From contig NC_134479.1 in NCBI RefSeq assembly GCF_964194025.1, positions 35,402,001 to 35,466,000 on the forward strand: a DNA stretch of 64,000 nucleotides. Reading direction: 5' to 3'. The notes under the pieces were generated by a model. That model did no database searches, was not told where the DNA came from, and saw nothing but the letters and a program-made list of their open reading frames with translations. Positions 13,464 through 44,140 of this stretch are shown piece by piece. The position numbers were made by a program, and so were the translations under genes. The DNA is from Convolutriloba macropyga. Its lineage: Eukaryota. The first letter of the stretch is position 1, and each line of letters begins with the position of its first letter.

Positions 13464-13597
13464 TATTCTTGCAAATTGGCAGAAAACCTGATCGAATGCC
13501 CACACCCGCCGTTGCTAACTGACGAAACAATTGAGTCTTATTTGGAATCACGGTCGGCTTTGAACACAATCGGCCAGCAATTCAACTTCTCAGTCAA
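13464..13597 (+). CDS. DCST-like exon (YSCKLAENLIECPHPP...QQFNFSV); 3' boundary uncertain
   Basis: TTTTAG acceptor at 13463. The Cys spacing resembles the end of the DCST1 extracellular Cys-rich region. An in-frame stop at 13608 requires a donor before it. Confidence 0.6.
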
Positions 13598-14868
13598 GAA
13601 AGACTTCTAAACACACGCTCATACTTCAACCACGCTGAATTAACAATGCACGCGTAAGGGGAAAGAATTGAACTCATGACTGTCTCAATTGGCATACAAA
13701 TCGCATAACCTACAGAGTAAATAACGCAATTTTTGGGGGGCAAACGGCGTATTTTGTGTAAAATTAATCGATATTGTAAATTTGAAATATGAGCCAAGAT
13801 CAAATAAAATGGAACTGGAAAACCCATTTGAGCATATAGCCGACAGTTTGAAGAAACAATTTGGTGGATTAAAGGAATCCTTTGGCACTTTTCGGCTAAT
13901 TGTTGGGGCTCTTATTTACTGTGTTCAGATGTTCCATATATGGACTTTCGCTATGCTTGTTCGCAGACTCTGGATTTATGTCCGAAAATACAATGTTAAT
14001 ATCGAATTCGACAACAAGTACTTGGAGGATTATTTTCTTCGCATCGAGAAAAGGTAACAAGCGGTCAAGTTTAACTCAAATAAAATACGCAAAAATGCTG
14101 CTCAAATTGAATAAATGTCATATCGTTCGTATAATTTCGATCACACATCCATTCGGCTCGGGGAGAGAAAATGATTATTTTTTTTTGTACCAGCAGTAAC
14201 AATAGCCAGGCGTGCTACTTAATTTAGTCTTTAATTGCTCTTGAATGAAGGTCATAGCAATTATTGTAAACGTGTGTGTCTTCCCGTACTGAGCCTCCAG
14301 AGACCATCAGGCCTGATTCAGAAAAAAATCAGACAAGGTCCCAGGCCTGATTCAGAGTCTGATCATGTCAAATACAAGGCTGCTAAGAGAACACTCCAGA
14401 GTCGATCTCTGAGGTTTCTATTGACAGAGAAAAATCAAGATTTGGGGGTCTCTGCCCAGAGAAATCCCAAGTCTTGGGTCTCTCTGCCAAGAGAAGGTCC
14501 AAGTCTTGGGTCACTCTGTGCAGAGTACAACCAAGACTTGGTGACCCCTTGGCAGGCAAGACACAAGACTTGGGATTTCTCTTGGCAGAAAGGATCCAAG
14601 ACTTGATTTTTTCTGGACAGAGGGTTAGAATGGTACATTTTCTACGTTCATGGGCACTTTTAACATAAGTTTGAGTACCCTTATGTACAAATAAAGCACC
14701 AAATATGATTATGAATGCTATTTAAACAATGTTCGTGGCTCTTGGTAAGGTATGGTCACCTTTTCAAGGCCAAAGGGGTTCTTAAAAATACAAATTCAAT
14801 ACTCACTGTTGAAGAGAAATGAAGAGCTATAGCTAAAAAAAACCAATACAATACCGAACATTACATAT

Positions 14869-14934
<66 letters not shown>

Positions 14935-23900: not shown

Positions 23901-26900
23901 CTTCAAAGTTAGCCTTAAAGGAGGAATAACTCCACAAAATAACTAAAAACTGTTGGTGAAACTGACCAAAGTAATAAGCGAAAGAATGTGAGATGTTGCA
24001 ACAATCACTGAAATAGTGTTATAAAATGTGTGGTGAAGCAATTAATATACATAAATGTTAAGATAGGAAAGTTAAACTAGAGAAAATTTTGTATTTTCGC
24101 GATAAAAAGGGTCCTTTTTGACAAAAGTACGCCTAAAATCTTCAATAAAAAGCAACTTGGCTATCCAAAAACTGTTGCCCATTGTTGATGAAAACGAAAA
24201 TAGGTCGTTAAATTTGGAAACCAAAGGTTTATGCGTATTTAAGCAAGTATAAACACGCACTTTGGTGTAAAATTTTGAGAAAATAAAAGAACATTGAGAA
24301 ATTCTTATCGGGAATAATTAGATAGGAAATGATTACTACTGCGTGTTGTGAACTATAGTTGACATTATGCATTTATTAAAAGCTAGCGCAGCTATTGTTT
24401 GAAAATATTTTATATTGCAACGAAACATTGTTACATACAACAAAAATATCAATAAAAACTTCTGGTTTATATAGTTTCGGGTGGTATCGGCCTCAATAAG
24501 GGCTCGATTGAAAATTTTTTTAGTAAAGTATTCTAAAGTAGCCTTCAATCTACCTAGACACTCAATCTTACAAATTGCGAAAACTTAAATTTAAGGAGTA
24601 CTAAAATAAGTGCAAACTATAGGGTGGGGTGCACTAGCAGAACAGATCCCTTTCCTCTGCTTCAACAGAAAATATAAATGATTCAGTTTTCAGGCTTTGA
24701 CATGTTTTGTATGATCTCTCAATGATTTCCAGGAGTGACTAACTATAGTTCATACAAGTCACATATGACCTAGTGTGATCACGTGATCACTAAGAGTCAT
24801 ATATGACTTAGTATGAATACTAAGAGTTTTGTATGATGAGCAACCCGTTTGTTTTGGAAGATGAGCATGTGCTATTCTGGGATTCATTTTGTATTTAATC
24901 TGGAAACGCGTTTTCCATTCGAAGTCGAATTGATCAGAATGAGATGGACAAAAAAATTTTGCGGTGACCCGTGATCGAACCAGGGACCTTTGGCCCTGAA
25001 ATTTAACAAACTCCCAACTGAGCTATCACGGCTGATCAACGACAGCGTTAGGCCATCAATATTAATAAAGCACTCGTTCCTTGTCAGCCTCAAACTTTTG
25101 ATCAGAACCAGTATTTCTGCTATTTGAATTGAAAAAGTGTTCACAAAGTTGTCGATGGCGGATATATAATCATAGAATCGTAGTTCCGCTTATTATCATT
25201 GTTTTTAGACAGCACAGGATTTTATCATTTCGGTTTGCATTTCAGTATTCTTTCAAATTTGCAAAAAAAATCTGATAGAATCAATTGTGTCATATTTGGA
25301 ATCGCGGTCGGCTTTTAACACAATCGGCAGTTAAATTTCTCAGTCATTCTCAGTCATACTATTCAACTTTTTAGCCTTCCTTTCATATACTTTTCTTATA
25401 GATCCGATGTAAATTTGACAGAAAATGAAATAGCTCGAATTGATTGCTTATCTTGGAATTATATTGTATTCTGAATGAAAAAAATGTTGAGCGGCAAAGC
25501 TGAATGATTAGTTATCAGGACTAATTGAGTGTCGAGCAATGCAATGATTATTCACAGGATAGTGGGTAATGCAGTTCAGAAAAGCTAATAGGAGAACCAT
25601 AATATCAAGACAGGTTTTAAACTGCTGAAACGAACGGGCGAAAGTGTTCCTTGTCTTTCATAGGCGAGCAGTTCTTACACCAATCGTTAATACATTTGTT
25701 TCAATTAAAAATAGATTTAGCTGATTGTGGTGCTGTTTGTGCGGTTTTAGAAGACAACGTGATAAGGAGATGTGCTTGTTTCCCCTGCGAGCTAACGAGA
25801 AACAACGTCTGCTTTCAATAACGCGACTTCTACCGACAAAAGACGAGTGTTCAAAACTTTTTGAAACAGGCATTATATTGGATCAAGGGGCTAATAAGCT
25901 GTAATAAAGAAACTTTTGCCCAGCAACAATAGCCTTACACAATTTCAATCAATTTCAAAAAATCAGAGGAAGACTTTTTCAACTCAGTTTGAGCAAATCA
26001 ACATCTTAACAACTGAACAACTGATTTTGCTCTAATTGAAAAGTCCTTTGTTTCTTGAGCGTTGGTCTTCATGGAAAAAAATTAAAAATTATTCAAATTT
26101 GTAAAAATGTCAGCAAGACACTCTTCCAGACCAGACACTCTCCCAGACTCTCGCAGACCAAGTCTGATTATAGTCCCAGATCAGTTTCGGCTGTAATCAG
26201 GTCATCTGATCAGTCAATTTACATGTGCAATTTGTTTGAGCTCATCGTGCTCTCAAAACTACCTCTGACCAGACCAATTACGGTTCTTTTTACGAGAGCA
26301 GAACTCAATTCTTTTTGTATTTTATGCTTTTATAGATCATGTTTCTGATGCAATTATCTATTATTCCAACATCCAAACTTATTCGGGGGTTAGGAACTTG
26401 CAATCCTACTTTTATTTTTTGCTAACCTGATAAAAAAGTGATATCCTTGGAGAGAGCTTGAAAAAAAGTTCATCAGTTGTTACTTATCCTGCCGCTTCAC
26501 GAAGTCATATCGCTACTAGGCTCAATTTTTTTCGTAACATTTACGTCCGTCTTTTTGTAAATTCTCCAGACAATTATTTTGGGGAATTTTTTTTTGCTTC
26601 TGATGAACCAAAAAGCGTCTGAGTCTAGAACTTAAGTCATATCAAAAATTTGACAAAAGTTACAGCTAAAAGGAAAGACATATTTAATTCTCTGAATCGA
26701 ATTGAGCTCTGTGCTTAGCAAATGATTTCTCAAATTATAACAAATGATTTCTCAAATTATAACAAATATTTTTTAAATATCGTTTGTTTTGCTCCTTTTA
26801 AAAGTGATGTCACAGCGAAAATAATCAGTCTATAAATTATAGCTCGCTCAAACAACAAAAACATTATAATTATCAGCAAAATTGAAACGTGGATTATTTT

Positions 26901-29900
26901 TAGAACCAGTTAGCATCAGTTGCAGGTGACCTAAACCAATGGTTTTAACAATAATGATTCTGTCTAAAAAATCCCTTACACCTTCATAGATAATGCCTTG
27001 GAGACCAATCAGGTAATCACGGTCCTTTTAATTATTTTTCGACCCCGACTGCAAACAATGTAATAAGTAATAATTACGATTTAAGTTATAAACTTTTCCA
27101 TACTTTCTGTAATTCAGAAATAAAAAAAAAATTAAAGTAAATTAGAAAATATTAACAAAAAGTAGCACAATAGACTAAAATATAGAAGGAAGGTTCTGGA
27201 TTCTACTCAAGGCAGAACTTTGCTGCAACTACATCTGGGTATACTCTCAAAAAATCTGCTCGCTTCGCTAAATTACTGTACGTTCCAAGAAAAAATTGGG
27301 GGGGGTAGCAAAAATGAAGAACAATAATTTTTGATTCCAGACCATAGCGCGACTTCTGGGAAGCGTTTCGCAGACCATGTAATTTGGGTTGCACCACGCC
27401 ACCAGTGGTTTTCTAAGCAAATTTTTCCAATTTGCGCTGTTCTATTTGTTCTATGGAAACCTTAATACACTATTTTGTGCTCAGCCAGCACCTTCTTGCA
27501 GCGGATGGCGTTCTTATTAAGGAAAACCCACCAATGTTGAAAGCAAAATCCCTGAGAGAGCTCGTTTAGCGCTTTAAATTTTAAGCTCATTATACTCCGT
27601 ACCCAAAAAAATTGTTTTTCACATCTTTAACAATATTTAAAATGACAGAAATTTGCAATTATAACAGATTATATTTCCAATTTTAGAACATAAAATCGAT
27701 TATGATGGAAATTAATTATATGAAATATAAAATCCCCAATCAATTATAATTCAGTAAAATTAAATTTAAAAAAATTTAATAGTTTAAAGTATCATTGCTT
27801 ATTCAAAATTAGCAACCTCTCTCTTCTCCAACTTTTTGTTTCCGCTACCTTTCTTTCTCTTTTCCTGCATCTCTGTTTGGAAAATTTGTGATCACCATTC
27901 AAAACTCCAATTTGAAGAGGAAAGGTGCAGGATCTTTTTTCCTTCAACCATTCTTCCTTGCAAGTTTTTCAAAAGATAAAATGAATGCCGTCAAAGAGAA
28001 ATAGCATCTCAATTACATTGAATAGCATCTTTTTTCTCAAATCATTATTATAAAATAATAAACTATACCTGGAAGTACTAGGTGTTCCCCAGTATTGCAA
28101 CTCTTTTTTTCATGTACTTGTCAAGGTCTTCCCAGGTTTAGTTGTCCGACTCTAGACCGCTATGGTGAGACCATTGGGATCGCATAACGGGAGTGTGGTG
28201 CGATCCAAATTACACGGTTCGTGAAACTTATGAATAGCACGATGGTCTAGACTATGGTCGTACTACCGTCTGATCAGAGAGCAATCAAGGAGAGAAATGC
28301 TCAAAAAACTAAACACGTTTTGATGCCTTTTGTTTCCATTCTTTTTGGATAATAACTTCGATTTGAAAAATTATACAGATCTTTTTTTTTAAATTTTGAT
28401 AACCTTTGTTTTCTGTAATCCCGTTGATGTTGCTGAGAGAAATCGTAGTCTCTGAAACAAAGGGGTGGGTTTTGTTAATTTTGTTTTTTTTGTGTTTAGA
28501 TTAATAACAGTTAGTTACCTTTTCGAATGATGTTGTGGAAAAATGGCGATGAGGAAAAAAGTTTGTTGAATATTCCTCTGAAAGTCTGGACCCTGGAATG
28601 GTGAAAAAAAACTCAAAATTTCAAAATGGACAAAAATAACACAAAAGTTTAAACAGATTACCTTTGTTGCGTTGAGTAACGAATTAAAACGGAGTTGATT
28701 GAGGCTAAATGTGTCACAGATCATAAAATCTGCAGCTCTATTCTGATTTGCTAAAATTCGAGTAATTTGGTTTTCGGTGTTAACGAAAACCTATAATAAT
28801 AAATTCTTTTTCGATTACTCAGAAATACAAATGGCAAACAATCCAAGCTAGCAGATGAAGGCTGATTTAAACTTTATGCAAAATTATGCAAAAGTTAACA
28901 AAATCAATTATAATTGAGAATTTTGAGACGGCTGTGGATGCGGGACATTAAACCAACTGCACGTAATTTTAAAACACGTCATAGTTGTCTAGATAAGTGG
29001 TTTTTTTGTGATTTAAATCTGTGAAAACTAATCCTAAAAAGCAACTCGATAAGAGAAAGAGGCAAGAGAAAACGACAAATTGATGTAGAATTTTGACTTA
29101 ACTTGATTGTTTTGTGATAAAAACGTTTTAATTTTAAATTTTACTTGAATATAAGAAGTGCTAACAGTAATTTTTCGCCTTGAGAAAATTTCCTTGATAT
29201 CTTTTCTCGCTCTAACCAAATTAATGCATGCACGAGAACATTGGTTTTCTAATTTCTAATGAACTTAGTTAACCAGATGGACCTAAATTTATAAAGACAA
29301 GAGTCGTAAATCGCGCAGCGCATAAACACAATTAAGCCATGTGAGTCGCTGACGGCTGCCATGAAAAATTGTTGTTTGTTAAGTTGGAACCCTTTTAGTA
29401 TGTGAAGCACAACCAATTCCAATCACCCTTAATGATTGTCTATTATGACAATTATTAATGATATAAAATATCTCATTTAATTTCTTGCTTAAATTATTTT
29501 CATATCTTTGTGAACTCGGCGAAATTACATAATATATCTCTGAATGTGTTAAATATCTTTTTTTTACTGTAAAAAAGCTTTTCTGTGTAAAAAAGTTATT
29601 TCACACATTCATTGATTAATTGCTCTCAAACGAAGTTTGTATCAATTATATTAGTCCTGTCGGTCTTTTTTATGCGATTTTTCTCTTGACCGATTTTTTG
29701 TCACGCTTTTGACTTTTTGTCCTCGAAAACGATTTAAACAGGTAGCGCCCAGCGGGCATTAAGTACTCTTAGAGCCTATCAGCTCTGTTTTAGCCCAAAC
29801 TGTTTTGGAGACTTAAACTTATGGTTTGAAGGGCGGTTCTTAAAGGTTGAAGACACCCTAACTTGTGACCCCCTCCTCCCCCCCCCCCAAAACATGCAAT

Positions 29901-32900
29901 TTTTTTTTCAAGTGTTGAAATTTTTGTCAGTTTTAGGTCTCTCAAGAGTAAAGAGCCACATAACCTCCTCTAGGGTTTGATTATAGGGTAATGCATAGCT
30001 TCTAGATGTAATGGAAGGTTTTGTCAAGATTTTATTATGAGCAATTTAAATTTTTTCAAGTTTTTTGAATCTTTTTGATTTTTTGTCATTTTTTCCAGCA
30101 CCATGGTCCTAGGAACCTCCTTCAAGGTTTGGTGATAAGCAGTGATAAGCGCAAATTTTTTTGAGTTTATGGAATGGTTATCAATATTTTAATGACTCCA
30201 GCTTTAGCAATTTTTGTTAAGTTTATTTTTTTCATTTTTTTCGGAAAATTATTATCATGTTCCAAGTTTATGAATCTCTTTGAGCCAGTGAAACTATTTA
30301 AAGCTTGAAATAGGGATTCTGGATAGTCTCGAGACATTGAAATAGTTTTGAAGAATTTAATAGCTGGAACTTTTTAAAGTTCGGTTAAAATTTGCGATTG
30401 TTTTCAAAATTTTTGAAAATACTCGAAAATTTTTCGAAAATAATTTCTAAAATTTTTCAATATTTTCGTCCTTTTCTGAGTTTAACAATCCTTACTGGCC
30501 AACGAAGCTTTTCAAGTCTCGCAGATGGGTTTCTTGACATAACTACAGAGACAAATATTAGTTTTGGCGAAATCTGGAGGCTTTTCTTTTAAATTTTGCA
30601 ATATTTTGCAAATTTTTAACAAATAAATTCTTTATTTGATTTATTTATTAAAATGGCTAGAAAACTATAAAAGATGCAGAATCGAATCAAGCTTAAGCTA
30701 GCCTCACCAAACCATGGCTAGCTCGCCGGTTGTTTGAGAGCAGTTCGCCCGACGTCGGTTATGTTATATTATGTAATTTAGCCGAGTTTAAGTAATTTTT
30801 GCCGAGTTTATGTAACTTCGCGGTCCAAAGGGAAACCTTGATCCAATTTTACCTGCAGGATTGTTTACATTGTTACGTCACGTAGCTTACTTTTCTGTGT
30901 TCGGATTTGATCAACTGATGACACGTGTGTTGTTCATGACAAGTCGCGCCCTCTACCTGGATGCAAAACTGGAAGCCTGGGAAAAGGTACTTTCTTGTGA
31001 ACAAATTGTAAGTTTTTTTCTGCGAGAACTTGAAAAAGAAGTAGCTTTTGTGAAAGCTAGACGGCTTTAATGCGGCTTTCGCGAGATTAATGCGTGATTA
31101 TGTGAACACAGAGTGTGCAAGATTTTAAATGGAATCCCGCATATCATCTTTTTAAAAGATCTTGTGACATTTTACATGAGACCAATTGACCTTTTCTACT
31201 CAAGGTCTCTAATTATGCTGTTCGCCAAACCGTCGAGGCGACATCAATTCATGATGTGAATTAGGGCAGTTATTTGAGGTTGACTTCTGCCCCCCCCCCC
31301 CCCCCCCCCCCCACTTCCACGCACTCCCTCCAGTGCGCCTCGTCCACCTCATTCCACCCATAACACGCGCTGAAAACACTCCAACCCTGGTCACACAGAA
31401 ATTGAGAAATTTGACCACAAAATCATTTAAATTTAAGCAATTGAAATCTATTGATGTAATTTTAGGTAGAAACAAGCGTGATTGGCGACGGGATAATGGC
31501 AAAGATTCTGCGGAAGTTGTCGTCTCTCTTCGAATCGAATAATAAACTGTCTCAGCAAATTTCTACTCTCAAATGTTTGCCCGAACTCTCATTCACGGAT
31601 GGAAATTTCTTCAAATTTTTCGCAGGAAAGCACTATCTTTGGGCTCTTTTGCTTTAATAGCAAGTTTTGCTAAAAACGAGTTTTTGTGTAGAAGTAATTG
31701 CTATAGTTGTCTTGTTTTCACTGCTAACTCATATAGAGGTAGGGTTCAAATTTTTTCATTGACTAAGCTTAGTCTGTTTGAACAAAAAATAAAAAATGTT
31801 TACAGCTGCAAGGAGTCTTCATTTTTTTTGTTTTTAATTTTTCATTTAAAAAACTTTAAAATTTTATTAAACGTAGAGTCAGCTAAACGTTTTTGGCTCG
31901 AATATCAATTCTGGCGATAGTTTCTATGACTACTAGAAAAGACCCATTATAACAAAAAATGAAGAAACTTGTGCGAACAAAAACTAATCGTCAAGATATC
32001 AGTTCCAGAGATAAAAAAATTGACAAAAAGCTGGAAAATTTTTTAGGTTTGGATGCTGACTCCCCATGTTTATGTCATTTGGCGTCCGAAAACAGGCTTC
32101 TAGCCTGATTGACGTACGTGNNNNNNNNNNNNNNNNNNNNNNNNNNNNNNNNNNNNNNNNNNNNNNNNNNNNNNNNNNNNNNNNNNNNNNNNNNNNNNNN
32201 NNNNNNNNNNNNNNNNNNNNNNNNNNNNNNNNNNNNNNNNNNNNNNNNNNNNNNNNNNNNNNNNNNNNNNNNNNNNNNNNNNNNNNNNNNNNNNNNNNNN
32301 NNNNNNNNNNNNNNNNNNNNATGAAAAAGATCAATTTTTTGATCGTGAAAAAAAGTAGTAAAATCCGCAAAAATATGTGCTCAATCCAATTCCTGTGTAT
32401 TTTTAGTGAAAGCTCACTTTTTTTCAATTTTCTTAAACTGGTTTCTGTTTTGACATCCCGGTCAGCCATCATACAACTTTCTTTGATATCATATTATGTC
32501 AGATATCGATACATAAAGGACACTTTCGTAGAAATCAAAGTAGATCGTATGTGGTCCGAATGAAATTCTTAATAGTCATACAAGGATCAAGTATAGTTTC
32601 CTGATAATCATACAAGGATCAAGATGATTTCTTTGTTTTGCTAGTAGGATGGTACTATGATATCAAGTACGGACAGTATGAAATCATATATGATCCTTGT
32701 ATGAAATCAACGAAACTTCACCCGTGGATTGGAAGTTAAGGATAAAAAAAGAGCCCCAATTTGCCCCCAAGTGATGGTTGTATGTCAGTGGATTTTGCAC
32801 TACACGAGGATATTTGTGACGCGTTCTTTCCATTTGATAGCAGCTTTGTACTACTATAGAAGAGGCAAAGACAGAACCCTCCACTTGTACAACTCATTCC

Positions 32901-35900
32901 TCAAGTATGTATTTTTCCTCGTTTTTCAGTTATCAAATAGAATCTTGGTTTGTTCCGACTGAAGTTTTGCATGAAATCCACAAAACTTCACGGTATTAAT
33001 TTTTTAACAAAAAAGTTCCGTAAATTTTCAAATTAAAGCAATAAAAATTTATGTAAGAATAACTGTGAATTTAACATAACTGTGATTAATTGCCCTCAAT
33101 AAAAGTTTGTCGCAATTATATTTGTCCTGTGGTCATTTATTAAATAAAATTTTTTGCTTGATCGACTTTTCGTATGAAGCATTTGATTTTTCGCCCTCAA
33201 GAATGGGATAAACAGGTAACGCTCGGGGGGCATTAAGTTCTCTTAGAGCCATACGCCTAACCACCGTCTACGAATACAATTCATCAAAAACTGTTTTGAG
33301 ACAACTTCATGGTGCAAAGGTGTTTCTTAATCTTGTAAGTTTGACAATCCAGTCACCCCCAGTCAATCAGCCCTCCCCTCCCCACTCACCCCCAACACAC
33401 CCCCATTCCTCCCTCCTCTACGTGGTGGTTGCGAACCCCCCTCGTCAAGTCGTCTCAACTTTACTCGACCCCCGCCAATCGCTGAACCCCCCCCCTATTC
33501 CGCTACCCCCACTCTATCCCCCATTCGAGCGTCTCTAAATCTCTAAGCCCCCATCTGGGTTCTACCGCAATCAACTGATCGCCGGTCGTTGGAGATTATT
33601 TCGTTCGACATTAGTTGGTTATGTTTCGTTTTGCACACGTTCCCATGTCTTGGTACCCAGACTAAAGTGACCACTGATCTGGAAAAGCCTTTGCGCGCAT
33701 TATAGTTTGAACAATGCGCTGAAACTTGACTGATCAGAGTTCACATCCGTCCTCGATGGTCTGATCAGAAACTGAATCGCCGCAGATACTCAATCACTGA
33801 ATCAGAAACATGAGTAAATTTTGAGTTAACTTTTGTCTTAGCAGAAGCAATTTAAAACGCACCATACTTTTGTCGGGGAAAAAGATTCGTTGATGCAAAA
33901 CAAATTACAGCAACTTGAAACAAATATCTGGAATAATACCACTACTCCCCTAAGCTGTTGACCTTAGCAACGTTTCGTTTCAAAAATGACGTGAATTAAT
34001 TGACCGCTTGCTTTTCAACGAGACCATCCTATAAGTTTCGGCGTTTTATCATTGGGATATCCGATAAGCAAGCGCAACCTTGCATATTAAAATCAAACGC
34101 CTTTTCTAAACAGTTACTATACGTTGGCGCAATTTACTGTCCAAAAAATAGTTCAAGCAGATCAACACAAATCTTTGAGATGTTGCCTCAAACCTAATGG
34201 TAAATTTATATGGGTTCTGGAACCATTCGTTAAAACATAGTGCCAGCCATTAGATTGTAGTCTTTCTAGGGTTCAAATCTCCAGCTACTTTTCATAAAAA
34301 ATTTCAGTTTTGTAATATAGTGATTATCTTAATTCTTTGAGAGTCAAACTAATTGACTCTCAAATTGCGAGGTTTTCTTTTTTATATTGCCAAATATATG
34401 TTAGGATAAAATTAGATTCAATCCACTCGAATTTTAAAAAATGACTCCAAGTCCAAATTATTATTTCTTGCAATTTCCGTGTGTCTCAATCACCTTATTA
34501 TAAAATCTATTGCCGTTCTATGTATAATTTGAAATCAGTCATGAAACAAATTAATCCGGTAAAATACTCCGAACGTTCTGCTGAATGTTTTGTTTTTGTG
34601 GATACATTTGTTGTTGGAATCTAGATATTGGAAAATATTGGAAACTAGAAAGAGAGAGAGAGAGAGAGAGAAACTGAGAGGAAGAGCACGAGAAACAGGG
34701 AAGGGAAGGGAGGAAGGGAGGAAAATGAACAGAGAGAAAAAATGAGAGGGANNNNNNNNNNNNNNNNNNNNNNNNNNNNNNNNNNNNNNNNNNNNNNNNN
34801 NNNNNNNNNNNNNNNNNNNNNNNNNNNNNNNNNNNNNNNNNNNNNNNNNNNNNNNNNNNNNNNNNNNNNNNNNNNNNNNNNNNNNNNNNNNNNNNNNNNN
34901 NNNNNNNNNNNNNNNNNNNNNNNNNNNNNNNNNNNNNNNNNNNNNNNNNNNNNNNNNNNNNNNNNNNNNNNNNNNNNNNNNNNNNNNNNNATGAAATGTT
35001 TCTTAAAAATTGTGCTAATATTTTTAAATTGTGCTAGTACTTTTTTTCGTTTTTTATTGTTATTAGTTGGTTTTCTGCATATGATTGGGTAAATTGATGA
35101 CACTCGAAACTGCATATTTGATTTTAACTTTTTAAAAAGCTAATTCACACTTATCACATAGCTTCTTTGTGCTGGGATAGCTTTATGTTATCTTACATGA
35201 TAATTGCAAGAAAAATATGTTTCAAGGCTCATGTATGACAATTGTTAATCAGTTAGTACATGTTCAAAAATTGAAGAAAGTTGAAAATTATCAAATTATT
35301 CAAAATTCAGAGTTAAAAAGCTGCGAGATTATTTTTTTTGTAGTAAATTTTGTCAGCTTTGATAATTGATGTTCTAACCCGGCGCAAACTTATAACCCAA
35401 AACGATATAAATTTACGGGCTGAATCAAGAGATTTTAAAGAAAATTTTCCTCAAATTTCATACACAAATGGGGGAGTAATGGTTTGAAAAAGATGTAGGA
35501 GTGGGTGGTTTTGGAGAACGTTTAGGAGAATTTGCGGCAATAGCTGGAGACAAGGGGGTTGCTTTTAATGCAAGAGTAACAGTAGTGTGGAGGAAAAAAT
35601 TGAAGAGTGTGCAAGAAAAAAGTGGAAGAGTGTGCGTACTGGGGAGATAAACGCGTACTGTGGAGATAAACGCGTACTGGGAGATAAACGCGTACTGTGG
35701 AGATAAACGCGTACTGGGAGATAAACGCGTACTGGGAGATAAACGCGTAGGGGTTGGGGGTTATAGGGATAAAACAATGTGGCCAGCGGTAATGAGAAGA
35801 AAACAATGTAGGTGTAGGTGTGGAGGCAAAGGGGAGAAAACGGCGCAGGAGTTATGGTACTGGGTAAAAAATTAAGAGTGGGGGAGGGGACGTAACGGGG

Positions 35901-36891
35901 GGGGGGGGGGTTAGAAACTCCTTTTATTACAACCCACTCTTACATTGCTTTCTGCCCAATACCCCTGAAATTACATCGATTTAACCCAGTAGTGACAACA
36001 TCTAATCTCGGAACCCCAAGCTATAGAATCATAAATTCTTACCTCTTAGCGCTCAAACACTCACGGCTGAACCCGTGCTTCGAATAAAACATTCAACGAG
36101 AAATGCAAGTAATCAATAATAATATATCATTACTTTTTTAACCCCTAATTTTACATGATTTTATCCCCAATAATAATGTTTGTAAATATTAGTCTGACGT
36201 AAATTCTAAAAATTATATGCCCTCATACCCTCACCCCCATCTGTTCCCCTATTATTATCAAATCGTTTTGGGAGAATTTGGGAGTTTTGGGGGTAAATTC
36301 AAAGAATATCGTCCCTAACCCCATTCCCCCCGTTACTCCTTCCCTTACATCGGTCTACGGAGATGTTGGGGAGAAATTTTGACAGTTGCAAAGGGATGAA
36401 AGGTAGCGTTTTAGTAACTTTTTTCATATTTTAGAGAACGAGTCCGAAAGTTTGAAACCTGCAAAACAACCCTTTTGTTACAACTGTGCCACAAAACAGA
36501 CCAAAATACGATTCCCATTGATGTTCTCAATTATGTCGCCACAAAATGCCTCCTACGCAGAAAACAGAAAAAACCAAATAGAAAATCTTCAATTAATATC
36601 AAAGATTGCGATTTCTGTGGTGAAAAACGAAATAGGGTTCACAAAACGTGTTTAGTGTGTGATTTCACGCTTTGCCAAGTTTGCTATGAACTCAGCTTGG
36701 GCGCTTGTGTTAAGTGCAAAATCGTGAAAACTCTTCGAGAAACAGGAAACGGTCAATGTCAAGTATGTGATCGATTTTTGACTGGAGACGAAGAACTTCT
36801 AACTTGTAAATTGAAAGCTGACAATAACAGTGATAACGTTATAAGAGTGTGTAATCTCTGCTCTGATGATAAACAGAGCAGTCATCATTAG
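13464..36891 (+). CDS. DC-STAMP domain protein (DCST1/sneaky/SPE-42-like), 5' end outside the window. Exons 13464-~13597, ~13799-14053, 25751-25869, 30859-30986, 31466-31625, 32772-32904, 36435-36891
   Basis: The spliced product carries family motifs in order: YN.NIEFDNKYL..YF.RIEKRR...LFPLR..E; FGFDQ; V.GDGIMAKILR; CLP; LIAALYY..R...R.L.LYN..LK.R; and a terminal CxxC-x10-CxxC-x4-CxxC-x7-CxxC RING-like domain. Splice phases from 14053 onward are mutually compatible. Confidence 0.85.
13799..14053 (+). CDS. DCST-like exon (...WIYVRKYNVNIEFDNKYLEDYFLRIEK); 5' boundary uncertain
   Basis: Hydrophobic segment followed by the FDN-Y motif. AG|GTAACA donor, phase 2. Confidence 0.85.
14300..14610. repeat. 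Cluster of degenerate short repeats (CTGAT(T)CAG and CCAAGTCTTGG/CCAAGACTTGG); a related cluster lies at 15790-16110
   Basis: Repeated CCAAG(T/A)CTTGG...CTCTGCCCAGAGA units of about 32 bp, in both orientations. Confidence 0.7.
14865..14933. repeat. (TA)n microsatellite
   Basis: Seen directly. Confidence 0.98.
16983..18095 (+). CDS. LINE ORF1, gag-like nucleic-acid-binding protein (intact, 370 aa)
   Basis: Three zinc knuckles: CFKCQQFGHSAKEC, CLRCSQEHSVKEC, CSNCGGAHATVYRGC. Confidence 0.93.
   Translation: MTADETTQDESDFNEVRSKRKRFRKQAQNPITNVRPIVVSIDPRPSQLQFARAIRSNFPVVKIKHIRELKNNTNFFIQPEDLASRECLMLTVNLTQAFPNATVNARNTLPKPKTKPSFVIVNVHHSISVDEIKVELLNNNAMNVNKVTRITSRTTGQPTKLIRVITDSNNHVSAAQKHGVKIGWQLYRCEASREPPLVMQCFKCQQFGHSAKECSNATRCLRCSQEHSVKECSVQKENAKCSNCGGAHATVYRGCPAYQQKLAEASRKRNENKYSTAAKNLKPQTNVEMPPQTEKIAVLIAEVLSKIRTVLNTMSYSDIINIVSNSASRIFNEKIDGQKIHESIKSANAIPVNSMPPNNISNSQNFNQNG
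18088..20792 (+). pseudogene. LINE ORF2 (apurinic-like endonuclease plus reverse transcriptase), disrupted
   Basis: Motifs ILQWNCRGL, GDFNS, SGH (degenerate SDH), PGPD, YRPISL, LDVEKAFD, PQGS, FADD. Frameshift at about 18315, stops at 18956 and 19460, probable frameshift at about 20735. The ATG overlaps the end of ORF1. Confidence 0.93.
22671..24849. repeat. Degenerate foldback/MITE-like region rich in CATACAAGGATCATATATG motifs (related patch at 32570-32725)
   Basis: The motif and its reverse complement cluster at 22690-22830, 23230-23370 and 24700-24845. The two ends are loosely inverted. Confidence 0.5.
24960..25032 (-). pseudogene. tRNA-Phe-derived pseudogene (anticodon position now reads TCA)
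   Basis: Ungapped match to the tRNA at 13188-13260. The D and anticodon stems are broken; the A and B boxes are largely kept. Confidence 0.85.
25033..25345 (+). pseudogene. Diverged duplicate of 13261-13595, including a dead copy of the DCST-like exon
   Basis: Shared blocks AATAAAGCAC..TTGTCAGCCT, AGCACAGGA.TTTATCA, TATTTGGAATC.CGGTCGGCTTT.AACACAATCGGC and TTCTCAGTCA, with an internal deletion. Confidence 0.85.
25751..25869 (+). CDS. DCST-like exon (RQRDKEMCLFPLRANEKQRLL...KLFET)
   Basis: TTTTAG acceptor; the phase matches the previous exon; LLPL-type motif; ends at AG|GCATTA. Confidence 0.8.
29590..29850 (+). repeat. Dispersed repeat family member (other copies at about 33083-33340 and 37420-37570)
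   Basis: Copies 1 and 2 share GATTAATTGC.CTCAA...AATTATATT.GTCCTGT. All three share AAACAG...GGGC...CTCTTAGAGCC...AAACTG.. Confidence 0.75.
30859..30986 (+). CDS. DCST-like exon (GLFTLLRHVAYFSVFGFDQ...LEAWEK)
   Basis: CCTGCAG acceptor and AAG|GTACTT donor. Transmembrane segment with the G-x-D motif. Confidence 0.85.
31466..31625 (+). CDS. DCST-like exon (VETSVIGDGIMAKILRKL...KCLPELSFTDGNFFKFFA)
   Basis: TTTTAG acceptor, phase 0. V.G.G..A..LR and CLP motifs. No usable GT donor before the in-frame stop at about 31655. Confidence 0.85.
32772..32904 (+). CDS. DCST-like exon (VMVVCQWILHY...IAALYYYRRGKDRTLHLYNSFLK)
   Basis: IAA.Y...R...R...LYN motif. The AA|GTATGT donor (phase 2) matches the last exon. 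Confidence 0.85.
34651..34751. repeat. (GA)n / purine-rich low-complexity tract next to an N gap
   Basis: Seen directly. Confidence 0.9.
35634..35749. repeat. Minisatellite, 6 copies of 18-19 bp GCGTACTG(T)GGAGATAAAC
   Basis: Seen directly; no spacers. Confidence 0.95.
36435..36891 (+). CDS. DCST-like terminal exon with a C4C4 RING-like domain and an extra Cys-rich tail
   Basis: Pyrimidine tract plus TTAG acceptor; CDFC...CLVC...CQVC...CVKC; TAG stop at 36889-36891. Confidence 0.85.
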
Positions 36892-38799: not shown

Positions 38800-41700
38800 T
38801 ATCAGTTCTTTTTGGTGAGTTCCTATTATGCCATTTCTTTGATTTGCGCAAAAATGAACGGGTATGTTGAATAATTTGAGTTCAGATTTGGTGATTCTAA
38901 AAGTCTATGCCAATTTTTTGAACCGAGTTTACAATTTATTGTTTCAAGTACCGTGCAAAACTTTAGCTTATTTTCTTGTCTCTTCTGTACACCTGTTGAA
39001 GTCCTTGTTACAAACCATCGTGCTGTTCCGCTTGTTAAATTGAGCCATTCTATAATTCGTCTTATAGGCCAAACACCTCTGGGACTAAACACGTCTCATA
39101 GGCCAAACAACTCGTTGATAACCCTACAAGATTATGTTCCCATTGAGTTTGTCTGATTGTGTTATTAATTTTGAGCGGCTCATAATGTTTGAGTTGTGCT
39201 TTTTTTCAGCGTTTCCAGTAATTCGCAAGTAACGTTTCGGTGTACAAGAAAACTTTTTTACTGCTTTTTTATTTGCTGGTATCAATGGTGCCCATTGATC
39301 GGTTGTGTCTGAAGAGACACGGATGACCAGTTTTGAGTTTTGAAGTCCTACAGTGAAGGCTCGAAATAATATAAGCGTTCATTTGTTGGCTGCCTGAATT
39401 CATTAGCAACGTGCTGATTTGAATTTTCTCAACAGTATTAGGATCAAGATATCATTATCGCTACACAAGTCTTTTGACGGCAAATCAACAAGTACCTCTG
39501 TCCAAAGTCTGGCAATTTTTCGGAAGCCTAGCTCTTTCTACAATAATGGTTGACAAGACATGTTTTTTTTTCTAATTTGTGATTTTTGTGCTTTCTATAA
39601 AATCTCCAAAATTATCTAATTCAAAATTTATAAACAAATTTTTTGTTTCTGAGGCTGCAAATCCGAAACTGTTGAAGTGCCCTATCAAGGAAGTAACATT
39701 TTCAGCTCTCGATCATCGGCAAACAAAGCACGTTTTGCTTTGCTTTTTTGAAAAAGGTCTTTTATAATGTATTTTATCTAATTTTTATCCTATAATTATG
39801 AAACTTTCTGACAAACGCTTCCTTGGTGTCTCTATTATTCGTCCACGAATGTAGCGAATTGTAAAAAATTGGTTTTCATATCTCGGTCTGTTCGCTGTTG
39901 AATGTGCCTAACAATTTTAGAGGAAGTTTTCTGTTGCGGTTGCCTCAACACAGAACGTCGTTCATCTTCATTGTGTTTGGTGGCTGGTCGTTTCCGGAGG
40001 ATATTGACCTCTTTCCTCTGTGTTTTTTGTTGCAAAAGTTTCTGCCTTCTAGAGAATTCTCCGTTTTCATTCACAAAAATTGTATTGGTTAAGAAACTGT
40101 CCTCTCTAAGAATCTGCTCAAATTACTGGCTTGACAATGGATCTTCAAGAATTTAAGGAGCTGGCCTGATAGCTTTTTTTCGTCCAAGTCTTTTAAGAAA
40201 GTTCTATCGTTCCATAGTAAGCCGGGTTCAATTGCTTTTTTCCGACTAAGGGTTTTTGAATTTTTTTCAATTCTTTTGGCAAAAAAATTTGAAATTTTTG
40301 CTACTGTCGGTCCGTAACCGTACTGTCGGTTAGAAACAAAATTTTGTCAATCTTCACAGTCGTCTTACATCAAACAAAAGAAGCCACTTTTGCTCCCATA
40401 GCTGCGGCTTTGTGCTCTATCATCCGATGGGGCTGTTGTTTTAATGGGTTCATATCTTGCTTTGCTAAACACTTATTGTGTTGTTGTTTCCAGAGCTGAG
40501 AGATCTGATATAAAAGCTGAATGTTTCTGCTGTACTTGATGTTTTTAAAATGTTTGCGTTAATGCTTGGCAAAAAAATCGGTATCGGTCATGTGTCTACA
40601 GAACTGTATGACATCCGTTTGATTTTGTCAACTGATTTTTGCACTTCAAGCTGAAATTCTCTTGGTTTCTCATTCCAGTAGTTGTTTTGTTCAATTATTG
40701 CTTTTAGAAAACATCACACTAAAATGGAAAGCGGTTAACTGATGTGTTAGTTCCAAGAGAACCAAACACTGATACGGCGAGTGACATCAAAAGACATTGC
40801 TGCTTGTTTCTAGTTTTCACTCTGGTTTTCAATCTGTATTTATGAAGATGAACGCCTCTTCCTTTGCATTCCACGATTGTCCTAAATTTTGTTGTTCTTC
40901 CACAGAGCCTAATTTTTCATTAGTTGCCTTCAATACATGGTTTGAATCGTTAGAAAAATTTTACCGCTGTTGTTGTGATTGCTGCCTTTTGAGTTGTACT
41001 AAGATTTGAAGGTATTCATCAAATTAGAAACTCTTTTTGATGGTTACGTAGGCATCAGAAATTTTGAATTTGAGATCATTTGCACATCTTTGTAGTATTG
41101 ATTTTGCATATTTCGTAAACGTATTACACAAATATCAATCAATTTTGATCTTGTTGTCTTAGGGAAACTTGCATAAACATCGCTTTAAAATCATTAATCT
41201 TTCTTGTTTTAAGTTTTCGCTACTGTTACCTTGGTTGAAAAATTCATACTTTTGGCGATTTGTTTGTTTTTGATTGAAAACAATTGTAAACTCTTCTATA
41301 AAGTTTGTTTTTTTTTACTATGAACTTATAAATAAATTGTTAGAATTGGATAGTCACCACGCGCCTTTTATGGCATAGCATTAAACCTAATAGCATCTAG
41401 CGAAAACATCTTCTGTAGTTCGCAAAAAATTAAGCATGTTACATTTTCAGCGTCAGGAGGGGAATTGTAAGGTTCTTTCAATTTGGGGCTATATATCATG
41501 TGCTGACTGTTTTCATCCTGAAAAGTTATTAACTCTTAGTTGTACATTTTTTCCGAACATTAATTTTCATAAATTGTAAATTGTTGTCTCTTAAGAGCGG
41601 ATATATTTTAGTAAGAGAACCAGCAACACTTTAGCTAATACAATAGGCATATTTTTTCTCGACTTCTGAATAGCTGTCAAATTTATATTTTCTAAAACAG

Positions 41701-44140
41701 TCCTTCGTTAAGTCTGTGGATTCGGATACAAATTCCTGTTTGTAATTACTATAAATCAATTGCCAAGCTGCCCTTTTTTGTTAATAATTGAACAAATCAA
41801 CTCGTTGCAATAACAAACACTATACTTTGGTATACTGCTTGAGATATCATATCAAGTAAAAATAGTTATCACTTTTTCTAAAATTTGGTGATTTTGTGGC
41901 TTTCAGTAAAAAAGGGACTTAGGTGGACTTTATGAAGGCAGATGAAACATAACTGCACTTACTTCCGACGCTTGAGTCATTCTTTCGTTGTTTAACGAGC
42001 CATTACTGAGTACCCCCTTATCACTATCCTTCAACTGAACTACTGAATATCAAATTGTGGAGCCTTCAGGAAAGTGTGGCAGAAATCCAAACCCAATGAA
42101 CCAAAGGTCCTCTTCGCTGTAACCCATACTATATGGTTCGCTTTATATTTCCCATTTATAGAAATATGAAGTTAAAATAGTATAACATATCATATGATTT
42201 TGAGAACCATTAAAATATCAGGTATTATTGATTGAGTTTTGAAGAACTAATGGTTTCCCTAGTTGAAGAGTTTCAAGCAATGTTGGGTAGTTAAAAATAG
42301 AGCAAGTTGAATCAAGGTCCAACATCAGTTGTATTTCTGAACTAATATGTTTTTTATTGTCTCCAGTAGCGAAATGATATAAGGAATATCCGGGCCTTTG
42401 GGTTTGCTATACTGTTTCCAGTATTTTTTGGAGACATTGTTAGTTTGAAGGAAACAAATCCAAGATAGCATCGGAAAATTCAACTCTAAACTCTTTTTGT
42501 GGAATCCAACAAACATTATTTTTTACTCTGCAGGCTATGTTGCTTAGTGTCCTGTAGTAAAGTAGACCTTGTAATACTATTTGCTCGATTTTCATTGATT
42601 CGACTATTTTCTCCCACATAGTATTGTTTAGCTGCGTAATTATTATGGCAGAAACGGTTTTCTCGTGGGACCCTTTAGTTATAATGCCATTATTGGTTAA
42701 ACATACTTCCTTACTTTTAATTTCCCGTTTTATGACCATTTATGTTATTGTGAAAAGAGTTTGGAGTTGGTCTTAAAAAATTCTAATTTTTTGTCTGGTT
42801 GCATATTGATTGTTTTTCCAACCTCCTCGTCTATATAAGATAATAGCCATTGGTATACCCGTGTTCTATTTTAATAATTCACTTCTAATCTTTTGTATTT
42901 CGTCATATAATTTCTTCTTGTTACAAGTAGATATTGAATGCCCATAAATTCTGCAATAACCACAGAAGCGAGTTATTTTTACTCTTCCTTTTTTAGTCGG
43001 GTCTCGAAAGAAAGTTTTTGACCCTTGCATAGCACTTAATTCGTTAGTTTCCATTAAATTTGTTATATCCGCCATCTGACATTCTAAAGTTGTTACTTTA
43101 TCTGACTATTGTTTATCCAAATTCACCTTAATTATTATGCAGATCTTTGCAGGTGATACTCTAGATCCTTTGTTATTAAATGCTCTTTCAATTCTCTCCT
43201 ACTTTCACCATTCTTCTTGATGCTTCGTTCATGAGCTTTTCAATTAACCAACGATGTTGCAGTCCCCTTATGTCAAGGTTAATACGTTTTTGTTCTTTTT
43301 GTCTAGTTTGTTTTATTTTTTGCGCTCGCTCAGATTGCCTGCATTTTTTAAATTCCTCTGGTCAACCTCTGTAAAAACTGTGCTTGAATCCGTGAAATTA
43401 ACTTTTTAGTTTATCGCCTTCTTGTCTGGACGCCTTTTCCACTTCTTATCTATGTTTAAATTTATCACGATGGTCTGTAAATCTGTCAAGGAGGTCATCT
43501 TTTATATCATTCAAGACTTTCAGACATCTCTTATTATCAGCATCAGGAGGAAATGGTCCTTGTGAAAACCTAACTTTTTGATTAACTGAGTTTGACAACT
43601 AAGGGGCAATTTGATTTGGATCATAACCCAAAAACTTTGTTAGCGATACAGTACTTAACGGATTTGAAGCATCAGCCATTTTAAGATGCAACTGGGACGT
43701 TGTCAAGTAAACATCCTAATTTAGTTTACAGTTCCTAATTTTTTGTATCAACCCGAGATGACTATAGAAAACCTAAGAATTGCGTCTTCTGGGTGCAGTT
43801 GGTTGTTTTTACACAGAGATATGATTTGAATTTTTTAAGTCTTTCAAGTAACATATCTAACGAGACATAGGAACTTTTTAAGGTAGCTGATGTAGTTTAA
43901 ACAAGAAAACTAAAACAATTCGGAGAAAAATCCTAATTATTTTTTTCTGTATAATAGAGATTATAAATAATAAGAACTACTTAACTAAGTCTAATCATAA
44001 GCCTTGAAACAAATTGGAGTTTTTCCGAAGTTTTTATCTGCCCAATAGCTTCTTTTCACTGATTTTCTTCGGAACACATAATTGGCTAACCTTCATCGTG
44101 CCGTGACGTTACTGTTAGCAACAATTTAACCTCGTCACCT
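38800..44140 (-). mobile_element. Heavily decayed Ty3/Gypsy-like LTR retrotransposon internal region
   Basis: On the minus strand: PBS-like AGGTGACGAGG at about 44130-44140; gag knuckle CGYCRIYGHSISTC (42866-43075); protease-like LDLDSTCSIFN (about 42300); RT-like SLDAIRFN (about 41395); W...EEAF (about 40860). The left limit is poorly defined and no LTR pair was identified. Confidence 0.6.

What the first reader, a model, noticed from the sequence alone, without database searches (positions are those of the whole stretch)
31626..32771. Probable non-canonical GA-AG intron in an otherwise intact DCST1-like gene
Seen in the sequence: exon 31466 has no usable GT before its in-frame stop, and the next exon needs phase 1. 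The junction GCAG|GAAAGC...CCCCAAG|TG gives the continuous peptide CLPELSFTDGNFFKFFA-V-MVVCQWILHY...IAALYY. Its CLP-to-IAAxY spacing equals that of DCST1 as I recall it. AG|GAAAG is the U2 donor consensus with +2 T>A. GA donors are very rare in animals. No downstream exon has stops or frameshifts, so the gene looks functional (inference). An alternative is a GC-AG intron at 31622-32788, which would delete 7 aa from the transmembrane segment. A 200-nt N gap lies inside the intron.
Basis: partly seen in the sequence, partly recalled or inferred. Interest (0 to 1): 0.75.

Follow-up and report, generated by a model that had tools for sequence, protein, structure and literature searches.

The report
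Spliced GA-AG intron with paired ends
A sperm-fusion-type gene (DCST1-like) of the acoel worm Convolutriloba macropyga holds an intron that starts with GA instead of the near-universal GT; a cDNA contig shows it is cut out exactly as predicted, and its two ends pair into a short helix, as in other odd introns noted in this genome.

Summary
Observation confirmed, interpretation supported. The window is C. macropyga chromosome sequence (assembly size and scaffold count match PMC13650328). One 331-nt contig of an independent 2016 run joins 31625 to 32772 and 32904 to 36435 with no mismatches. The first joint can be placed three ways, and only GA..AG keeps a G at +1 and a 3' AG. Three DNA runs and the assembly lack the joined form and read A at 31627. 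The N gap lies wholly inside the excised part.

New here: a 10-bp perfect helix joins intron positions +16 to +25 with -25 to -16. A second, predicted GC-AG intron of the same gene (25870-30858) has a 12-bp helix. Nine GT-AG introns of this gene and its paralog have only 4-6 bp.

The scan had already noted this class (GA/GG/GC-AG introns with paired ends) on other DNA of this genome; this is one more case, with cDNA support. I found no paper describing it in acoels. GA-AG introns themselves are known in other animals. Not shown: that the spliceosome makes the cut, and that the helix has a role.

The parts
13464..13592 (+). predicted exon (family HMM positions about 280-321)
   Evidence: hmmsearch of ORF pieces with an HMM of 125 DCST representatives; acceptor ttttag|, donor TCA|GTCAAG read. 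No RNA support.
13794..14053 (+). predicted exon (HMM 320-406)
   Evidence: 34.5 bits, E 4e-10; tblastn hits of DCST1 representatives; donor AAG|GTAACA.
25751..25869 (+). predicted exon (Pfam DC_STAMP 16-57)
   Evidence: Pfam 21.2 bits, family HMM 406-443; the phase-2 join with the previous exon gives AGA.
25870..30858 (+). predicted GC-AG intron (CAG|GCATTA ... CCTGCAG|GA) with a 12-bp terminal helix, arms 25877-25888 and 30836-30847
   Evidence: Best in-frame, stop-free junction in a scan of all donor and AG-acceptor pairs (186.4 bits; none of the 15 best-scoring junctions listed has a GT donor). Helix ATTGGATCAAGG/CCTTGATCCAAT, dG -26.1 against -12.5+-3.1 for shuffles. Not checked in RNA.
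30859..30986 (+). predicted exon (transmembrane segment, HMM 446-485)
   Evidence: Weak HMM hit in the right order; phases fit on both sides; donor AAG|GTACTT.
31466..31625 (+). exon ending in ...FFKFFA + G of the split Val codon
   Evidence: Pfam DC_STAMP 105-144; cDNA contig covers 31496-31625.
31626..32771 (+). GA-AG intron, phase 1, 1146 nt as assembled (true length unknown because of the gap)
   Evidence: cDNA joint; absent from the DNA runs and the assembly.
31623..31631 (+). donor CAG|GAAAGC: 7 of 9 positions match CAG|GTAAGT, mismatches at +2 and +6
31641..31650 (+). 5' arm of the terminal helix, GGGCTCTTTT (intron +16 to +25)
   Evidence: 10-bp perfect complement of 32747-32756. A complement this long occurs in 0.7% of 20,000 window pairs.
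32121..32320 (.). assembly gap (N), inside the intron
   Evidence: DNA contigs stop at both edges, and depth is raised beside them, which indicates repeats
32576..32717 (.). very high-copy hairpin-like repeat inside the intron (MITE-like)
   Evidence: Inverted arms of 25-27 nt; word depth 40,000-70,000 against about 40 nearby.
32747..32756 (+). 3' arm of the terminal helix, AAAAGAGCCC (ends 15 nt before the intron's last base)
32760..32771 (+). acceptor TTTGCCCCCAAG|
32772..32904 (+). exon (TG)MVVCQW...LYNSFL, Pfam DC_STAMP 152-191
32905..36434 (+). GT-AG intron (holds N gap 34752-34990)
   Evidence: cDNA joint GT..AG, skips 3530 nt
36435..36888 (+). last coding exon, Cys-rich C-terminus, stop at 36886-36888
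   Evidence: cDNA covers 36435-36502; open frame; only a weak Pfam C1_2 hit

Best explanation
This is a real, in-use intron of a functional DC-STAMP-family (DCST1-like) gene.

Shown: the mRNA joins 31625 to 32772.

Inferred: the borders are GA...AG, and the major (U2-type) spliceosome removes the intron. The donor CAG|GAAAGC keeps every consensus position that pairs with U1 except +2 and +6. That is the pattern of GC-AG introns and of the GA-AG introns known from Eurytemora and Oikopleura. In addition, a 10-bp helix between +16..+25 and -25..-16 folds the roughly 1-kb intron so that donor and acceptor sit about 30 nt apart. I take this helix to help a weak donor find its acceptor and branch region.

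The intron belongs to a class of non-GT (GA/GC/GG)-AG introns with paired ends that recurs in this genome. At this position it is probably a lineage-specific gain, possibly from an inverted-repeat element.
For: Excision:
- cDNA contig with two exact exon joints, the second a canonical GT-AG.
- No joined form in three DNA runs or in the assembly.
- A at 31627 in all DNA contigs.

Functional product:
- Gap-free alignment to five DCST proteins across the junction.
- Zero net indel in 10 of 11 homologs.
- 81.9 against 66.8 bits for the observed junction over the alternative.
- The 461-aa model scores 186 bits.

Spliceosome-like signals:
- G at +1, AG at the 3' end, CAG before the donor, A at +3 and +4, G at +5. 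PMC7072748 reports the same flanks for GA-AG introns.

Helix:
- 10 bp perfect; 0.7% of background window pairs reach this.
- The gene's other non-GT intron has 12 bp (0.05% of background).
- Four GT-AG introns here and five in the C3 paralog have 4-6 bp.
- Earlier notes of this scan report the same pattern elsewhere in this genome.

Lineage-specific position:
- Starfish, Lingula and amphioxus DCST1 have no intron at this site.
Against: - RNA support is one low-depth contig (depth 6.4) in one run whose record says 'DNA?'.
- cDNA cannot tell GA..AG from AG..CA or GG..AA.
- No lariat or branch point is known, and the 3' pyrimidine tract is poor.
- None of 27 U1 gene copies has the base that would pair with +2 A.
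- The helix has no covariation test, because no ortholog or paralog of this intron could be fetched. Its energy is only marginal in some window sizes (p 0.01-0.25).
- The GC-AG intron and the C3 paralog introns are predictions without RNA.
- The intron ends are single-copy, so a transposon origin has no direct support.
- A crinoid DCST2-like gene has a phase-1 intron one codon away, so an old, slid intron is not excluded.
Confidence: 0.6

Rival explanations
1. The GA-AG intron is real and spliceosomal, but the helix is irrelevant: a chance match, or a decaying relic of inverted repeats. The intron is a sporadic GA-AG case carried by its strong flanking consensus alone.
For: GA-AG introns without any described helix are spliced in Eurytemora, Oikopleura and human FGFR genes (PMC7072748). 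The donor matches 7 of 9 consensus positions. Duplex energy is not significant with 60- or 80-nt windows. No covariation data exist.
Against: Both non-GT introns of the gene have long perfect helices (10 and 12 bp; 0.7% and 0.05% of background), while 9 GT-AG introns have none. Unchecked notes of this scan report the same link at other loci.
Confidence: 0.2
2. The intron is cut out by a route that does not use the spliceosome and is guided by the terminal helix, as has been proposed for euglenid nonconventional introns. The G...AG borders would then be incidental.
For: Terminal pairing together with non-GT borders is the hallmark of Euglena nonconventional introns, for which a spliceosome-independent route is discussed (PMC11170887). 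The cDNA allows three border placements. No U1 copy matches a GA donor.
Against: Donor and acceptor keep spliceosomal consensus at every position but +2 and +6. Both non-GT introns here, and those in the earlier notes, keep G at +1 and AG at the end, which a structure-only cut would not need. The distance from helix to cut site differs between the two introns (15/15 against 7/11 nt), so there is no fixed ruler.
Confidence: 0.12
3. Artefact: the joint in X5 comes from reverse-transcriptase template switching across the hairpin or from a chimeric contig, or the A at 31627 is an assembly error.
For: There is a single contig of depth 6.4. A helix and a 2-nt repeat (AG) flank the joint, which are conditions that favour template switching (discussed in PMC7072748). 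A second X5 contig departs from the exon at 31620.
Against: The joint restores the frame and the exact family spacing, which an artefact would hit by chance about once in hundreds of possible deletions. The same contig carries a clean GT-AG joint 133 nt further on. Unspliced, the exon runs into a stop. A at 31627 stands in contigs of three further runs.
Confidence: 0.04
4. One reading: a GC-AG intron 31622-32788 that removes 7 residues of the transmembrane segment, or another isoform as the main product.
For: GC at 31622 and a fair acceptor ...TGTCAG| at 32788 exist. An unexplained X5 contig leaves the exon at 31620.
Against: It is not seen in the cDNA contig. It scores 15 bits lower on the family HMM, and lower for 84 of 89 homologs. 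It would put a 7-aa deletion where five homologs align without gaps.
Confidence: 0.02
5. A recent pseudogene whose intron is mostly retained.
For: Low-depth X5 contigs lie on unique intron DNA (31700-31865), so some unspliced RNA or DNA is present.
Against: Seven exons are open and in frame, 186 bits to the family HMM. The spliced form is present at about twice the depth of the intronic contigs.
Confidence: 0.02

Closest known systems
GA-AG introns of the copepod Eurytemora affinis and the tunicate Oikopleura dioica (PMC7072748), and the GA 5' splice site of human FGFR genes (cited there)
   Same: GA at the 5' end and AG at the 3' end; AG before the donor and A after it; removal supported by RNA data; presumed major-spliceosome substrates.
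   Different: No terminal helix is described for those introns. The FGFR site depends on a canonical GT six nt upstream, which is absent here (no GT between 31575 and the stop). The U1 variant proposed for Eurytemora has no counterpart with a matching change here.
Nonconventional (and 'intermediate') introns of euglenids (PMC11170887)
   Same: Non-GT borders combined with base pairing between the two intron ends; GT-AG introns of the same genome lack such pairing; a transposon origin is suspected.
   Different: Euglenid pairing sits within the last 10 nt or so of each end and the borders are highly variable. Here the arms start 8-16 nt in, and +1 G, the 3' AG and the rest of the donor consensus are kept. 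The host is an animal.
Introner elements of the dinoflagellate Amoebophrya (PMC7789003)
   Same: Non-canonical introns with 8-20-nt inverted repeats joining the 5' and 3' ends, thought to bring the exon ends together.
   Different: Those are repeated families with 3-5-nt direct repeats at the borders. This intron's ends are single-copy in the assembly, and only a 2-nt AG repeat flanks it.
Non-canonical introns of Fritillaria borealis (PMC13326754)
   Same: An animal lineage in which the spliceosome handles many non-GT introns.
   Different: In Fritillaria about 95% of introns break the GT/AG rule at both ends, with duplicated U2AF. Here most introns are GT-AG and only +2 varies. U2AF was not examined.
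DCST1/Sneaky/SPE-42 sperm membrane proteins (PMC8055269, PMC8989947)
   Same: DC-STAMP domain; conserved CLP...RxLxLYN block; Cys-rich C-terminus; best named matches are DCST1 and sneaky.
   Different: At most 24% identity and a long branch with weak placement. Pfam's DCST1 RING model was not hit. The N-terminal third was not found. No expression or function data.

Membership tests
Canonical U2-type intron (GT-AG or GC-AG) | GT (or GC) as the first two intron bases | tested here: not met
   None of the three placements allowed by the cDNA joint starts with GT or GC (AG, GG or GA). There is no GT between 31575 and the stop at 31655.
GA-AG non-canonical U2-type intron | G at +1, A at +2, AG at the 3' end | tested here: met
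   Placement 31626-32771 of the joint. It is the only placement with a 3' AG.
GA-AG non-canonical U2-type intron | Rest of the donor close to consensus (AG before the donor, A after it) | tested here: met
   CAG|GAAAGC, 7 of 9 matches to CAG|GTAAGT; same flanks as in PMC7072748.
GA-AG non-canonical U2-type intron | Removed from RNA at these borders | tested here: met
   331-nt cDNA contig, 0 mismatches; one run only.
GA-AG non-canonical U2-type intron | Spliceosomal chemistry (branch point, lariat) | not testable with these tools
   Needs lariat reads or wet-lab work.
U12-type (minor spliceosome) intron | Donor /RTATCCTT | tested here: not met
   The donor is GAAAGCAC.
Hairpin-ended non-canonical introns (euglenid nonconventional introns, Amoebophrya introners, this scan's acoel class) | Base pairing between the 5' end and a site just before the 3' end, absent from GT-AG introns | tested here: met
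   10 bp perfect (31641-31650 with 32747-32756). Background for 10 bp or more is 0.7%. Nine GT-AG introns have 4-6 bp.
Hairpin-ended non-canonical introns (euglenid nonconventional introns, Amoebophrya introners, this scan's acoel class) | Helix kept by compensatory changes in related introns | not tested
   No ortholog or paralog of this intron could be fetched.
Introner / transposon-derived intron | Many near-identical copies in the genome | tested here: not met
   The 5' end (31440-31720) and the 3' end (32715-32800) each match only themselves. Short arms alone would escape this search.
Introner / transposon-derived intron | Target-site duplication at the borders | tested here: inconclusive
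   Only the 2-nt AG is repeated ('both = 2').
DC-STAMP domain family (Pfam PF07782) | Match to the DC_STAMP profile | tested here: met
   Three exon pieces match profile 16-57, 105-144 and 152-191 in order (21.2, 17.1 and 22.7 bits). Each is under the 25-bit cut-off alone. The spliced model scores 186 bits on an HMM of 125 family representatives.
DCST1 orthologs (as against DCST2) | Groups with named DCST1/sneaky in a tree | tested here: inconclusive
   It falls on the DCST1 side next to tapeworm DCST1, but on a long branch (1.88) with support 83-87 and a long-branch warning.
DCST1 orthologs (as against DCST2) | C-terminal DCST RING finger (PF26037) | tested here: inconclusive
   A Cys-rich pattern is present, but Pfam gave only C1_2 at 20 bits.

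The most novel reading that the evidence does not exclude
Acoels of this lineage run a second, structure-assisted mode of splicing. Introns whose donor has any base at +2 (GA, GC, GG) are accepted provided that a helix ties the 5' end to the region before the 3' AG. Such introns are still being gained. This intron would be an RNA-supported example in a conserved fertilisation gene.
Probability: 0.35. Interest if true: 0.8.

Novelty: new variant of a known kind. Interest (0 to 1): 0.62.

Why it matters
The GT at the start of introns is among the most fixed signals in eukaryotic genes. Animals that break it in numbers are few (Oikopleura, Fritillaria, Eurytemora).

This case shows, with cDNA, that C. 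macropyga removes a GA-AG intron precisely from a conserved gene. It also links non-GT donors to end-to-end pairing inside one gene family: 2 of 2 non-GT introns against 0 of 9 GT introns.

If the link holds genome-wide, acoels offer an animal system for two questions. One is how RNA structure can stand in for a splice-site base. The other is how new introns arise.

There is also a practical consequence. Standard gene finders and aligners that insist on GT/GC-AG will break or mis-join such genes in the coming annotation of this assembly.

Tried and rejected
- Run searches listed no run on record as RNA. X5 was used because its 0.25 word share fitted exon-only coverage.
- A retrocopy as the source of the joined contig is rejected.
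- A second gene copy is rejected.
- The loose-end string of a second X5 contig was sought in the window and in the genome and not found. It stays unexplained.
- The C4 intronless paralog, and an HMM built from it, were too distant to map exons.
- Three protein word searches were run: the paralog gave 3 acoel hits; the last exon gave none; a mixed alignment gave only itself. So no acoel ortholog of this gene was reached, and no covariation test of the helix was possible.
- The protein atlas search on the last exon gave no usable hit.
- A U1 variant that would pair with +2 A was looked for in 27 copies and not found.
- A stwintron-type two-step removal was considered and rejected, because no internal GT follows the first G.
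- An FGFR-type dependence on an upstream GT was considered and rejected, because there is none.
- No attempt was made to read or fill the N gap.
Full report
**Source of the window**

The window is G000:C12:35402001-35466000. G000 has 1,175,981,408 bases in 4694 pieces. These are the figures published for the Convolutriloba macropyga assembly txConMacr16.3: 1175.98 Mb, 4694 scaffolds, PacBio HiFi (PMC13650328). So the animal is an acoel worm.

**The observation**

The + strand frame from 31466 reads VETSVIGDGIMAKILRKLSSLFESNNKLSQQISTLKCLPELSFTDGNFFKFFAGKHYLWALLL and then TAA at 31655. The last GT before that stop is at 31575, inside the CLP codons. No GT donor can therefore save the frame.

Bases 31622-31631 are GCAG|GAAAGC and 32765-32776 are CCCCAAG|TGATG. 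The next open stretch needs one base from the exon before it. Pfam DC_STAMP matches the first piece at profile 105-144 and the second at 152-191. The seven residues NFFKFFA fill 145-151 exactly. The N gap 32121-32320 lies between the two pieces.

**RNA and DNA evidence**

- Run X5 is from 2016, from a different study than the assembly, carries the same organism label and is recorded as 'DNA?'. It has a 331-nt contig without a single mismatch that lies on 31496-31623, 32770-32904 and 36435-36502.
- The first joint skips 1146 nt with two ambiguous letters. The removed piece is therefore 31624-32769 (AG..CA), 31625-32770 (GG..AA) or 31626-32771 (GA..AG).
- The second joint removes 32905-36434, GT..AG. 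It leads in frame into the Cys-rich last exon, which ends at the stop at 36886-36888.
- A contig with two exact exon joints, one of them canonical, is cDNA.
- The joined form is absent from three DNA runs of the assembly project (X1, X2, X4) and from the assembly at up to 2 mismatches. The exon is single-copy. A processed copy is thus not the source.
- The DNA contigs of X1, X2 and X4 cover 31325-32088/32120 with no base difference, so A at 31627 is not an assembly slip. The animals come from one culture of a species that also buds asexually, so these are not independent population samples.
- No DNA contig crosses the gap, and repeats flank it. The intron's true length is unknown. The cDNA ties both flanks together in order and orientation, and the gap is wholly in the removed part.

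**Is the junction the functional one?**

I collected DC-STAMP family representatives with a profile of the intronless paralogs on C4.

- The spliced 248-residue piece hits them at up to 55 bits. The best named ones are amphioxus DCST1, fly sneaky, and octopus, starfish and Lingula DCST1, with DCST2 close behind.
- In tblastn, 10 of 11 representatives with matches on both sides of the intron show zero net indel with the observed junction.
- On an HMM of 125 representatives, the first exon ends and the second begins at the same position, 542.
- A multiple alignment with five homologs is gap-free from CLP to LYN.

**Gene model**

HMM hits, phases and splice signals give these exons:

- 13464-13592
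- 13794-14053
- 25751-25869
- 30859-30986
- 31466-31625
- 32772-32904
- 36435-36888

Together they make 461 residues, open throughout, scoring 186 bits on the family HMM. The N-terminal third was not found. Only the last two junctions have cDNA support.

Four introns are GT-AG. The intron 25870-30858 can only be non-GT: among all in-frame, stop-free pairs of a donor and an AG acceptor, the best is CAG|GCATTA...CCTGCAG|GA, and none of the 15 best-scoring junctions listed has a GT donor.

A tree puts the protein on the DCST1/sneaky side next to tapeworm DCST1, but on a long branch with weak support. 'DCST1-like' is therefore tentative. DCST1 and DCST2 are sperm proteins needed for gamete fusion in mouse, fish, fly and nematode (PMC8055269, PMC8989947).

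**The helix**

Earlier notes of this scan on other parts of the same genome describe GA/GG/GC-AG introns whose 5' end pairs with a site just before the 3' AG. I tested that idea here.

| Intron(s) | Longest perfect complement (first vs last 45 nt) | Share of background pairs reaching it |
|---|---|---|
| GA-AG, 31626-32771 | 10 bp: 31641-31650 (GGGCTCTTTT) with 32747-32756; each arm 15 nt from its splice site | 0.7% |
| Predicted GC-AG, 25870-30858 | 12 bp: 25877-25888 with 30836-30847; dG -26.1 against -12.5+-3.1 for shuffles | 0.05% |
| Four GT-AG introns of this gene | 5-6 bp | typical |
| Five GT-AG introns modelled in the C3 paralog | 4-6 bp | typical |

The background comes from 20,000 pairs of 45-nt windows taken from this window's own DNA. 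The helix measurements are, and the paralog values. So 2 of 2 non-GT introns carry a helix, against 0 of 9 GT introns. For the GA intron the duplex energy alone is only marginal (p 0.01 to 0.25, depending on window size).

**Age and origin**

- Starfish, Lingula and amphioxus DCST1 have no intron at this site. Their nearest introns lie just before CLP and after YP-K.
- The phase-0 intron 30987-31465 is shared by all homologs compared that carry introns in this region, apart from a one-residue offset in amphioxus DCST1.
- A crinoid DCST2-like gene has a phase-1 intron one codon upstream. The C3 paralog has a GT-AG phase-1 intron five codons downstream.
- The position is therefore most likely a lineage-specific gain, though a slid old intron is not excluded.
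- The intron's ends are single-copy and only AG is repeated at the borders, so a transposon origin is a guess. A very high-copy hairpin repeat sits inside the intron at 32576-32717, but it is not at the ends.

**Mechanism**

The donor keeps 7 of 9 consensus positions, with the AG-before and A-after flanks reported for GA-AG introns of Eurytemora and Oikopleura (PMC7072748). The 3' end is AG. It is not U12-type. I therefore favour the major spliceosome tolerating a +2 mismatch, with the helix shortening the path between donor and acceptor.

The genome has 27 U1 matches with strikingly varied 5' ends. All keep the A that pairs with +2 U, so no U1 copy is tailored to GA.

A helix-guided, non-spliceosomal route, as discussed for Euglena nonconventional introns (PMC11170887), cannot be excluded. 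It is less likely because +1 G, the 3' AG and the donor flanks are kept, and because the spacing between helix and cut site differs between the two introns.

**Novelty**

GA-AG introns are known in animals. Introns with paired ends and odd borders are known in euglenids and in Amoebophrya (PMC7789003). Mass non-canonical splicing is known in Fritillaria (PMC13326754). I found no paper on non-GT or hairpin-ended introns in acoels.

Within this scan the class was already noted at other loci. This locus adds a case with cDNA support and a clean within-family contrast.

**Left open**

- A second X5 contig leaves the exon at 31620 for sequence not found in the assembly.
- An X4 contig links 31861 back to 31603.
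- The nature of run X5 is uncertain: it also holds low-depth contigs on unique intron DNA.

Noticed in passing
G000 loci L012-L038 (U1 snRNA genes on C1, C4, C5, C7, C10, C15, C1753): 27 U1 matches, 25 over Rfam's gathering score, with varied 5' ends. About half are canonical ATACTTACCTGG. Others read TTGATTACCTGG (4 copies), ATATTTAAAACCTGG / AAAACCTGG (5), ATTTATACCTGG (2), ATACTAACCTGG, ATATTCAGAACCTGG and ATACTTACTTGG. These change the bases that read donor positions +3 to +6 (and -1 in the ATACTTACTTGG copy); none changes the base that reads +2.
   Followed up: partly
window 25870-30858: A second non-GT intron of the same gene, predicted GC-AG (CAG|GCATTA), with a 12-bp perfect helix between 25877-25888 and 30836-30847. 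No RNA check was possible.
   Followed up: yes
window 32576-32717: Hairpin-like repeat with 25-27-nt inverted arms (TCATACAAGGATC...) inside the intron. Word depth is 40,000-70,000 in DNA runs, so it is one of the most abundant small repeats of this genome.
   Followed up: partly
window 16953-20803: Non-LTR retrotransposon-like ORFs inside the 11.7-kb intron 14054-25750: a 380-aa ORF with a Cys-His knuckle motif, then ORFs of 215, 167 and 447 aa, the last with an FADD reverse-transcriptase motif. Judged by eye only.
   Followed up: no
window 31603-31861 and 31620: An X4 DNA contig goes from 31861 back to 31603 with 18 letters between (a possible tandem-duplication allele). An X5 contig leaves the exon at 31620 for sequence that is absent from the assembly.
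   Followed up: partly
G000:C4:36520493-36521047 and C4:36063713-36064267 (L001, L002): Two intronless DC-STAMP-domain genes about 457 kb apart (432- and 476-aa ORFs, 114 bits to Pfam DC_STAMP). Relatives in other acoel data reach 45-69% identity, among them a Symsagittifera roscoffensis RefSeq protein in the same cluster.
   Followed up: partly
G000:C3:79528280-79549811: A second multi-exon DCST paralog. It was modelled with five GT-AG introns, none with paired ends. Its intron in the transmembrane segment lies five codons 3' of the GA-AG site, in the same phase.
   Followed up: yes
window 41394-41576 and 45112-45294; 42490-43580 and 46207-47300: The same ORF strings recur at an offset of about 3.7 kb, which indicates a tandem duplication of several kb downstream of the gene.
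   Followed up: no
window 1-13000: tblastn noise hits recur with periods of about 2.9 kb (626, 3549, 6466) and about 1.9 kb (7861, 9791, 11718). Tandem repeats therefore lie upstream of the first exon that was found.
   Followed up: no
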